From: Oikopleura dioica | Lineage: Eukaryota; Animalia; Chordata | Direction of reading: 5' to 3' | DNA length: 64,000 nt | Assembly (NCBI GenBank): GCA_907165135.1 | Contig: OU015569.1 | Span: 1,302,001-1,366,000, forward strand | Part shown: one piece after another, positions 50,629 to 57,335 of the stretch | Layout: each line of letters begins with the position of its first letter | Position numbering within the stretch: the stretch's first letter is position 1 | Notes under the pieces: model-generated | Seen by the model: the letters and a program-made list of their open reading frames with translations, nothing else | Databases searched by the model: none | What the model was told of the DNA's origin: nothing | Position numbers and translations under genes: made by a program

Positions 50629-50701
50629 GGTCTTGTGGCGCAATGGATAACGCGTCTGCCTACGGAGCAGAAGATTCCAGGTTCGAGTCCTGGCAAGATC
50701 G
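50629..50701 (+). tRNA. trnR-ACG: tRNA-Arg(ACG)
   Basis: Acceptor stem GGTCTTG/CAAGATC, D arm TGGCGCAATGGATAACGCG, anticodon stem TCTGC-CTACGGA-GCAGA, T arm CCAGG-TTCGAGT-CCTGG, T4 terminator downstream. Confidence 0.98.
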
Positions 50702-56247: not shown

Positions 56248-56451
56248 CGTTGACGAAGGTAAAAACAATTTGAATTTGATTTATTCCGATAAATGGAATA
56301 AATTTTTTGAGTGTCAGATTATGACACTCCTTTGAATAACAACGCTCATCTTTTGTCCGACTTTATTTGAGATAAAACGTCACTGACCTCACCCTGTATT
56401 TGCCCTGTACATTCATTTAAACAAAGATTAATTTTGATAAAAAAGGAACAA

Positions 56452-56638
56452 AAAGGTTTCGGCGCCCATCTGAATGCCCCGGTCGAGTTGTTGTGCCAAT
56501 GTGTTCAAACCTCTGAAATAGGCTTCTCTCGCTTTCAGGTAACACCAGTCTAGCCTGTTCCTGAGAAGTTCAAGCGTCTCGGCGTCAAGGGCCGGAAATC
56601 TGCGGCGGTGGACAAGCGGGTGAGACAAACCGAAACCC
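56452..56638 (-). ncRNA. Candidate Pol III structured RNA, copy 1 (family unassigned)
   Basis: Starts GGGTTTCGG about 30 nt after TTTATAA; 5' end pairs with 3' CCGAAACC; ends in two T runs; near-identical to copy 2. Confidence 0.55.
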
Positions 56639-56639
56639 T

Positions 56640-56815
56640 GAAAATTCCCGCAACTCGCACCCTTATAAAGCGATTTTTGGGTTTTTTTTACCACGGGCGC
56701 CTCTTCCTTCTGATCGAAGATTATAGATATCTCTAAAATCAGTGATCTGAAGGGAGGAGCCCTTGCGAAAACTCGAAAATCGCTTTATAAGGGAGCGACT
56801 TTCGCAAGATTTTCA
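56640..56815. promoter_or_regulatory. Back-to-back type-3 Pol III-like promoters
   Basis: Each direction has AAAATCGCTTTATAAGGG at about -30 and a shared GATCWGAAGGRAG motif at about -72 to -77; the sequence between these motifs and the start differs between copies. Confidence 0.5.
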
Positions 56816-57002
56816 GGGTTTCGGTTTGTCTCACCCGTTTGTCCACTGCCGCCGGATTCCGGCCACTGACGCCGAGACGCTTGAACTTCTCAGGAACAGG
56901 CTAGACTGGTGTTACCTGAAAGCGAGAGAAGCCTATTTCAGAAGTTTGGACACATTGGCACAACAACTCGACCGGGGCATTCAGATGAGCGCCGAAACCT
57001 TT
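56816..57002 (+). ncRNA. Candidate Pol III structured RNA, copy 2 (family unassigned)
   Basis: As copy 1; terminator CCTTTTTGCCATTTTTTT. Confidence 0.55.
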
Positions 57003-57335
57003 TTGCCATTTTTTTGGGAATCAAGGAAGAGAATTATTTCTAACACACAATTTTTTCGGTTGCTCAAAAATTATTGTGGATCATTTTTTATAAACTAGTG
57101 TAAAAGAACCTTAGAAATTGGATAAACCAAAATGTAGAAAATCTACAACGTAAAAATGAATTACGCGCATTAACGAATCATGAGTCAAGTTCGATTGTAG
57201 AAGCTGATTCTGTCGCGTATTTACCCTTCGAGCGAGAGCATTTTTTTGTTTTCTTTTGTGACAAAAGTGCGATTTGAAGGAAACCGCCAACACGAACAAG
57301 CACCGCGAATTCTAAAAAAAAGAGAAATTCTTCAA

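What the first reader, a model, noticed from the sequence alone, without database searches (positions are those of the whole stretch)
56452..57010. Head-to-head pair of unassigned about 185-nt structured RNA genes with Pol III type-3 anatomy
Seen: two near-identical units in inverted orientation. Each has TTTATAA about 30 nt upstream of a G start, a shared upstream motif at about -75, and two T runs; homology stops right after the T runs, with no TSD. 5' GGTTTCGG pairs with 3' CCGAAACC, and there is a long internal stem (TTGAACTTCT..AGGCT / AGCCT..AGAAGTTTGG). Three substitutions between copies are A/G changes opposite U that keep pairing, and others fall in a small loop. Established: U6, 7SK, RNase P and RNase MRP use PSE+TATA promoters and oligo-T terminators. 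Inference: a duplicated functional ncRNA. It lacks the diagnostic motifs of U6, U3, 7SK (GAUC pair), SRP and vault. GAGAG and ACCGGGGCAUUCA faintly recall RNase MRP, but the CR-I partner is missing. It could be an extremely derived P/MRP RNA or a new RNA class.
Basis: partly seen in the sequence, partly recalled or inferred. Interest (0 to 1): 0.82.

Follow-up and report, generated by a model that had tools for sequence, protein, structure and literature searches.

The report
Conserved unassigned Pol III RNA gene pair
Two head-to-head copies of a gene for a roughly 185-base RNA, built like genes read by RNA polymerase III, sit at the same spot in three diverged Oikopleura dioica lineages and match no known RNA family, but nobody has yet shown that the RNA is made.

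Summary
Window 56449-56637 (-) and 56817-57004 (+) are two inverted, 94.6% identical units. Each has TTTATAAG about 31 nt upstream of a G start, a shared distal motif at about -90 to -58, and a T5 terminator.

New evidence: the same head-to-head pair lies between the same neighbours (an ABCG transporter gene and the clathrin light chain gene) in the Bergen O. dioica assembly and in two marine metagenome lineages. The RNA body is 87-90% identical between lineages. The 3' flanks are at the 55-60% level of forced alignment, and homology stops at the T run. The promoter blocks are conserved too. Copies are more alike within a lineage than between lineages, which indicates gene conversion.

Identity stays open. 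Rfam gives no match, even at E<=10 on the RNA alone. There are no box A/B elements, no GAUC, and no telomere template. The MRP-like GAGAG sits in a variable loop and reads AAACA in one lineage. The ORFs across the RNA are spurious.

The structure is only a model: 96% of cells pair, but covariation is uninformative and folding z-scores are weak.

Best reading: a functional Pol III type-3 small RNA gene pair of an unassigned family. It may be a very derived stand-in for the 7SK, vault or Y RNAs reported missing in this species. A derived RNase P/MRP RNA is not supported.

The parts
56817..57004 (+). Right RNA gene: about 184-nt RNA body (56817-57000, possibly starting at G56816) plus the T5 terminator (57000-57004)
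   Evidence: Sequence. Alignment of the two copies. 87-90% identical to the Bergen and metagenome copies, with homology ending at the T run. Covariance model R1 scores 213.7 bits.
57009..57015 (+). Second T run (T7) behind the right gene, a possible back-up terminator. It is not conserved in the other lineages.
56768..56797 (+). Proximal promoter block of the right gene (AAAACTCGAAAATCGCTTTATAAGGGAGCG), with TTTATAAG at 56784-56791, 31 nt upstream of the start
   Evidence: Near-invariant in all promoter copies of the three lineages
56726..56759 (+). Distal upstream motif of the right gene (about -91 to -58). The consensus in the other copies is TAATCTTCGATCAGAAGGAAGAG. It is a candidate PSE/DSE-like element.
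   Evidence: Conserved across copies and lineages. Its function is inferred.
56449..56637 (-). Left RNA gene: RNA body 56637 down to 56454, T5 at 56454-56450
   Evidence: R1 scores 206 bits. Orthologous copy next to ABCG in L007 and L008.
56439..56444 (-). Second T run (T6) behind the left gene
56648..56685 (-). Proximal promoter block of the left gene, with TTTATAAG at 56663-56670
   Evidence: Inverted repeat I2. Alignment.
56701..56731 (-). Distal upstream motif of the left gene. The two distal motifs abut a central GATATC, so the two starts are only 179 bp apart.

Best explanation
The locus holds two divergently transcribed, independently promoted genes for one small non-coding RNA of about 185 nt, built like RNA polymerase III type-3 (gene-external promoter) genes.

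Inferred mechanism: a TATA box at about -31, with the adjoining conserved block and a distal motif at about -90 to -58, recruits the Pol III machinery. Transcription starts at the G of GGUUUCGG and stops in the T5 run. This would leave a 3' oligo-U tail.

The RNA is predicted to fold as a rod. A 9-bp stem closes the 5' and 3' ends. Interrupted helices lead to a junction that carries a small, variable hairpin and a long hairpin of about 70 nt. The stem of the long hairpin is invariant and its apical loop is free to vary. An invariant tract, ACAACAACUCGA, is predicted to be single-stranded. The invariant stem and this tract are the likely binding surfaces of a stable RNP.

The two copies are kept alike by gene conversion between the inverted repeats.

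The RNA belongs to no described family. It is either a lineage-specific RNA or a very derived counterpart of one of the type-3 RNAs reported missing in this species (7SK, Y, or vault).

Shown: the gene anatomy, conservation at the same place between the same neighbours, the non-coding nature, and the absence of family matches. Inferred: transcription by Pol III, the fold, and RNP function.
For: Anatomy.

Shared position: the same head-to-head pair lies between ABCG and the clathrin light chain gene in the Bergen assembly (L008), in a JGI metagenome (L001/L007) and in a third lineage (L009).

Selective conservation: RNA 86.6-89.9% identical between Okinawa and the other lineages; promoter -100..-1, 60-80%; 100 nt of 3' flank, 55-60%, which is the level of forced alignment. 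BLAST homology ends at the T run. The neighbouring clathrin exon is only 77% identical at the protein level.

Substitutions cluster in the small hairpin and the apical loop. Changes in stems are mostly A/G opposite U.

Not coding: every difference between the copies changes the amino acid in the open frame, and that frame is closed in the Bergen-type copy.

Concerted evolution: paralogs are 94.6% (Okinawa) and 98.9% (Bergen) identical, against about 89% between lineages.

No internal box A/B beyond chance, so the promoter is external only.

Low copy number: two per locus and none elsewhere in 92 kb held. A 24-base pattern hit only the two contigs of this locus in the JGI metagenome collection.
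Against: The fold is not thermodynamically unusual: z is -0.65 to -1.6 for the whole RNA and the long hairpin, and -1.9 to -2.3 for the small hairpin.

Covariation is uninformative. The RNAalifold model has 0 double-sided changes. An alternative local helix has one (C54-G141 against U54-A141), which is a single evolutionary event.

Only three closely related lineages were reachable.

The upstream motifs could not be compared with this species' U6 or RNase P/MRP promoters.

Each unit points toward the adjacent protein-coding gene, so a DNA-level regulatory role is not excluded.
Confidence: 0.72

Rival explanations
1. It is the missing O. dioica member of a known type-3 or vault-type family, diverged beyond recognition by covariance models. 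In order of plausibility: 7SK RNA, vault RNA, Y RNA.
For: 7SK was not found in O. dioica (PMC5006418). Vault, Y and U7 models gave nothing in O. dioica, although vault RNA was found in nine other tunicates (PMC8704543 supplement). O. dioica has a major vault protein (PMC3762200). The gene has the TATA plus upstream-motif promoter, a 5'/3' closing stem, an oligo-U end and a clustered duplicate copy, which are typical of these families.
Against: No Rfam hit to 7SK, Arthropod_7SK, Vault or Y_RNA at E<=10 on the RNA alone, in either lineage tested. There is no GAUC anywhere, and no 3' hairpin before the U tail, because the 3' end pairs with the 5' end. There is no box A or box B beyond chance. No GGUCCGA-type Ro helix is present (sequence). 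The length of 184 nt is far below 7SK and above any vault or Y RNA that I know of.
Confidence: 0.22
2. It is an extremely reduced RNase P or RNase MRP RNA.
For: P1-like closing stem. AUUCAGAUGA near the 3' end resembles the CR-V consensus as I recall it. GAGAG resembles the MRP P8 loop (the resemblance rests on my own knowledge).
Against: No P or MRP model hit. AUUCAGAUGA becomes AUUCGGACGG in the Bergen and L009 copies, and GAGAG becomes AAACA in L009. No CR-I partner exists. The snRNA complement including P and MRP is reported as conserved in O. dioica (PMC5006418).
Confidence: 0.03
3. It is not a gene for a discrete RNA. Either the inverted repeat is read through as one long hairpin transcript that feeds small-RNA production, or it is the relic of a foldback transposon.
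For: Arms of about 290 nt at 88-93% complementarity with a short spacer would form a long hairpin if transcribed through. MITEs and palindromic cassettes are common in this genome (earlier notes).
Against: The pair is fixed at the same position in three lineages, with no target-site duplication and no other copies. In the other lineages the spacer is 420-680 bp and diverges freely, while each arm keeps its own TATA, upstream motif and T-run end. A read-through hairpin does not explain this.
Confidence: 0.05
4. It is a DNA-level palindromic regulatory module shared by the divergent ABCG and clathrin light chain genes, and the RNA-like features are incidental.
For: Each arm faces its neighbouring gene. 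The pairing with these two genes is conserved.
Against: The clathrin gene has its own conserved upstream block about 190 bp further downstream. Conservation spans 184 contiguous bases and ends exactly at a T run. The variable segments coincide with predicted loops.
Confidence: 0.05

Closest known systems
Pol III type-3 small RNA genes (U6, 7SK, RNase P/MRP RNA, Y RNA)
   Same: TATA box about 30 nt upstream of a G start. Conserved upstream motifs. No internal box A/B. Termination in a T run. Small clustered gene copies.
   Different: The RNA body matches none of these families by covariance model or by their diagnostic motifs. Pol III transcription itself is untested, and the upstream motif has not been compared with the species' U6 PSE.
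7SK snRNA
   Same: Purely external promoter. Long conserved hairpin. 3' oligo-U. The family has not been found in O. dioica.
   Different: About 184 nt instead of about 300 or more. No GAUC/GAUC HEXIM site. No terminal 3' hairpin. No Rfam match.
Vault RNA
   Same: 5' and 3' ends pair to close the molecule, the central part is variable, the genes come as small clusters, there is an upstream TATA, and O. dioica has MVP but no detected vault RNA.
   Different: No internal box A or box B. About twice the usual length. No Rfam match.
Ciliate/plant-type Pol III telomerase RNA
   Same: Pol III-type gene. Closing stem, small hairpin, long hairpin, and a conserved single-stranded tract.
   Different: No permutation of CCCUAA to template the TTAGGG telomere repeat of O. 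dioica.

Membership tests
Pol III type-3 gene | TATA box at about -25 to -30 from the start | tested here: met
   TTTATAAG lies 31 nt upstream of the G start in both window copies and in every copy of the other lineages.
Pol III type-3 gene | Conserved proximal/distal upstream element (PSE/DSE) | tested here: inconclusive
   Two upstream blocks are conserved across copies and lineages. They could not be compared with this species' U6 or P/MRP promoters.
Pol III type-3 gene | Oligo-T terminator at the end of the conserved body | tested here: met
   T5-T8 follows directly after CCGAAACC in all copies, and cross-lineage homology ends there.
Pol III type-3 gene | No internal box A/B promoter | tested here: met
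   The best box A and box B matches are no better than in shuffled sequence.
Pol III type-3 gene | Transcribed by Pol III into a discrete RNA | not testable with these tools
RNase P / RNase MRP RNA | CR-I and CR-V forming the P4 pseudoknot; match to the family covariance model | tested here: not met
   No RNaseP_nuc or RNase_MRP hit at E<=10. The CR-V-like and GAGAG strings are not conserved between lineages. No CR-I partner is present.
7SK RNA | 5' hairpin with paired GAUC motifs (HEXIM site) | tested here: not met
   No GATC anywhere in the Okinawa right-copy RNA. None is visible in the other copies (sequences).
7SK RNA | 3' terminal hairpin followed by the U tail (LARP7 site); family covariance model | tested here: not met
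   The 3' end pairs with the 5' end. No 7SK or Arthropod_7SK hit.
Vault RNA | Internal box A and box B | tested here: not met
   best matches have 2-3 mismatches, which 23-95% of shuffles reach.
Vault RNA | Family covariance model (RF00006); association with MVP/TEP1 | tested here: not met
   No Vault hit at E<=10. Protein association is not testable here.
Y RNA | Ro60-binding lower stem with a bulged C (GGUCCGA-type); family model | tested here: not met
   The 5' end reads GGUUUCGGUUUG. No Y_RNA hit. The motif definition comes from my own knowledge.
Telomerase RNA (Pol III type) | Template complementary to the telomere repeat (TTAGGG in O. dioica, PMC8008620) | tested here: not met
   No permutation of CCCTAA in the RNA.
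Foldback transposon / MITE | Target-site duplication, many dispersed copies, presence/absence polymorphism | tested here: not met
   No TSD. No other copy in the window or loci. Only this locus was hit in the metagenome scan. The pair is fixed at the same place in three lineages. The whole-genome copy number was not testable.

The most novel reading that the evidence does not exclude
This is the founding member of an undescribed family of Pol III type-3 small RNAs in larvaceans. It would be a stable RNP scaffold unrelated by descent to U6, 7SK, P/MRP, Y or vault RNA, and might take over the role of one of the RNAs that O. dioica appears to lack.
Probability: 0.4. Interest if true: 0.75.

Novelty: new variant of a known kind. 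Interest (0 to 1): 0.6.

Why it matters
The set of Pol III type-3 RNAs in animals is small and is thought to be essentially complete. O. dioica is a chordate model with an extremely reduced and rearranged genome, in which 7SK, vault, Y and U7 RNAs have all escaped detection.

A conserved, duplicated type-3-style gene for an RNA with no family match has two possible meanings. It may be one of those missing RNAs in a form that would redefine what is essential in that family. Or it may be a new abundant small RNA in a chordate. Either way it gives a concrete target for Northern blots, RIP and knock-down experiments.

It is also a clean example of gene conversion keeping an inverted RNA gene pair uniform.

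Tried and rejected
1. Rfam at gathering thresholds on the window, and at E<=10 on 651, 195 and 200 bases. This gave only weak miRNA-hairpin noise and an 8.7-bit U6atac hit.

2. Coding reading. The 111-aa and 88-aa ORFs across the RNA are not on record as genes. All differences between the copies are non-synonymous, and the frame is closed in the Bergen type.

3. Similarity of the 5' end to the 3' half of the O. dioica spliced leader (sequence from PMC6883708). It is not significant: 14-17% of shuffles score as well.

4. Box A/B, GAUC and telomere template searches were all negative.

5. My recollected resemblances to human vault RNA and 7SK 5' segments. I treated these as leads only. I found comparable resemblances to both, so I give them no weight.

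6. A more distant species. The clathrin contigs L011-L014 (64% protein identity) have only 273 bp upstream and no RNA there. L010 also stops short.

7. Earlier scan notes searched by sequence gave nothing.

8. Literature searches for Oikopleura with 7SK, vault RNA, polymerase III and HEXIM found no description of this RNA.

The clathrin gene was searched exon by exon by reference.

Full report
**The observation**

The window holds a near-perfect inverted pair. The repeat finder gives arms 56439-56645 / 56809-57015 (207 nt, 93%) and 56649-56685 / 56768-56804 (37 nt, 86%).

Reading the sequence and aligning the two units shows that each unit has four parts:
- a distal motif at about -91 to -58;
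- a proximal block ending in TTTATAAG, 31 nt upstream of a G start;
- a body of about 184 nt that begins GGTTTCGG and ends CCGAAACC;
- a T5 run, followed a few bases later by a second T run.

Homology between the arms stops just after the T runs. The two starts are only 179 bp apart.

A probe from the body matches only these two places in the window, against 0.03 expected. BLASTN finds nothing else in the 64 kb. No target-site duplication is visible.

Of the ten differences between the copies, three are A/G changes opposite a U in predicted stems. The rest lie in the small hairpin or in unpaired positions.

**It is not a coding exon**

Both units happen to be open in one frame (111 and 88 codons). 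Every difference between the copies changes the amino acid. There is no ATG start. Neither ORF is on record as a gene. The frame is closed in the Bergen-type copy.

**Surroundings and organism**

The pair lies between an ABCG transporter gene on the minus strand and the clathrin light chain gene on the plus strand. Each RNA unit points toward its neighbouring gene. Earlier notes of this scan name the genome as Okinawa Oikopleura dioica. The match to the Bergen O. dioica scaffold FN653050.1 agrees with this.

**Related loci**

No DNA collection of eukaryote genomes was available, so I reached other lineages through the neighbouring clathrin gene. I searched it exon by exon by reference and did not build or search a joined model. 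This gave four sources.
- A JGI marine metagenome contig, L001, carries the last 73 nt of the RNA upstream of the clathrin gene.
- A pattern scan of the metagenome collection hit only that contig and one more, L007. L007 carries a full copy next to ABCG, a 439-bp spacer, and the 5' half of the second copy in inverted orientation.
- The Bergen reference assembly, L008, has both copies between ABCG and the clathrin gene, separated by a 553-N gap.
- An ENA metagenome contig, L009, comes from a third lineage and holds a full right copy and part of the left copy.

So the head-to-head pair, its orientation and its neighbours are shared by three diverged O. dioica lineages.

**Pattern of conservation**

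| Region | Identity, Okinawa vs other lineages |
|---|---|
| RNA body | 86.6-89.9% |
| 100 nt upstream | 60-80% |
| 100 nt of 3' flank | 55-60% (what forced alignment of unrelated AT-rich DNA gives) |

The upstream conservation is concentrated in two blocks, the TATA-containing block and TAATCTTCGATCAGAAG. BLAST homology ends at the T run. For scale, the adjacent clathrin exon is only 77% identical at the protein level.

Within the RNA, change is concentrated in two segments: the small hairpin (positions about 30-50) and the apical loop of the long hairpin (about 94-112). The 5' 29 nt, the stem of the long hairpin, the tract ACAACAACUCGA and the 3' closing strand are invariant or nearly so.

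This is the signature of a constrained RNA gene with its own promoter and terminator. It does not fit a transposon relic or neutral DNA.

**Concerted evolution**

The duplication is shared by all lineages. Yet the paralogs are 94.6% (Okinawa) and 98.9% (Bergen) identical, against about 89% between lineages. Lineage-specific changes are present in both copies of a lineage. Gene conversion between the inverted arms is the simplest explanation.

**Structure**

RNAalifold on five copies gives these elements:
- a 9-bp closing stem (1-9 with 175-183);
- interrupted helices;
- a small hairpin;
- a helix at the base of the long hairpin;
- a three-part long hairpin (about 63-136).

Overall 96% of cells pair, against 34-50% when partners are slid. 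The structure was derived from these same sequences, however, so that contrast is expected.

There are no double-sided changes in this model. An alternative local helix contains one (C54-G141 in Okinawa, U54-A141 in the others), which is a single event.

Folding energies are unremarkable, with z of -0.65 to -2.3. The fold is therefore a working model and is not demonstrated.

**Identity**

Rfam gives no family at gathering thresholds. At E<=10 on the RNA alone, in two lineages, it gives only noise.

- *RNase P/MRP.* No model hit. The CR-V-like string and the GAGAG are not conserved: AUUCAGAUGA becomes AUUCGGACGG, and GAGAG becomes AAACA in L009. The literature implies that P and MRP RNAs were found in O. 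dioica (PMC5006418). An earlier unchecked note places both, also head-to-head, elsewhere in this genome.
- *7SK.* No GAUC at all, no 3' terminal hairpin, and about half the expected length.
- *Vault.* No box A or box B beyond chance, and about twice the usual length.
- *Y RNA.* No Ro-type stem.
- *Pol III-type telomerase RNA.* No template for TTAGGG, the telomere repeat of this species (PMC8008620).
- *Spliced leader.* A resemblance of the 5' end to the spliced leader is not significant.

It remains relevant that 7SK, vault, Y and U7 RNAs have not been found in O. dioica (PMC5006418; PMC8704543 supplement), although the species has a major vault protein (PMC3762200). This RNA could be a very derived stand-in for one of them, but no defining feature of any of these families is met.

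**What could not be done**

Only one further species was reached, and its contigs stop 273 bp upstream of the clathrin gene without any RNA. No contig that I took for human was met.

**Verdict**

The interpretation as a functional, duplicated Pol III-type ncRNA gene is considerably strengthened by conservation at the same genomic position. The P/MRP suggestion is rejected. The family remains unassigned.

I put about 0.72 on a functional type-3 small RNA gene pair. Within that, I put about 0.4 overall on a truly new family and about 0.2 on a derived 7SK, vault or Y RNA.

Noticed in passing
window 57186-57275; L001 about 300-381; L010 about 150-245: A block upstream of the clathrin light chain start (ATGAGTCAAGTTCGATTGT..AAGCTGATTCTGTCGCGTATTTAC.. 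followed by a T-rich tract) is about 89% conserved between lineages. It contains an AP-1-like TGAGTCA. It is probably the clathrin gene's own promoter or 5' leader, separate from the RNA gene.
   Followed up: partly
window 56638-56816 versus L007 108-546, L009 109-530, L008 4745-5427: The distance between the two RNA starts is 179 bp in the Okinawa genome but 420-680 bp in the other lineages. In Okinawa the two distal promoter motifs abut a central GATATC, so each promoter can be at most about 90 bp long.
   Followed up: partly
L008 4754-5306 and 5307-5427: The Bergen assembly has a 553-N gap between the copies. The promoter next to its clathrin-side copy is 100% identical to the ABCG-side promoter of metagenome contig L007, but only 87.5% identical to L007's clathrin-side promoter. 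This could be an assembly artefact, homogenisation, or a flip of the segment between the inverted repeats.
   Followed up: partly
L008 4555-4744 (-): The ABCG-side copy in the Bergen assembly has two private substitutions (G7 to C and C174 to A). Both break predicted pairs near the closing stem, and both are absent from the same-lineage metagenome copy. They may be sequencing errors or a polymorphic weakened copy.
   Followed up: no
window 56380-56412; L007 about 885-915: A short block upstream of ABCG (CGTCACTG.CCTC.CCCTGTATTT) is conserved between lineages. It is probably part of the ABCG promoter.
   Followed up: no
L011 1-1489, L012-L014: TARA and other marine metagenome contigs carry a clathrin light chain gene only about 64% identical to O. 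dioica, with short introns. They probably come from another larvacean. No copy of the RNA lies within the 273 bp upstream that are held.
   Followed up: partly
window 50629-50701 (+): This tRNA gene is the only Rfam match at gathering threshold in the window (60.8 bits).
   Followed up: no
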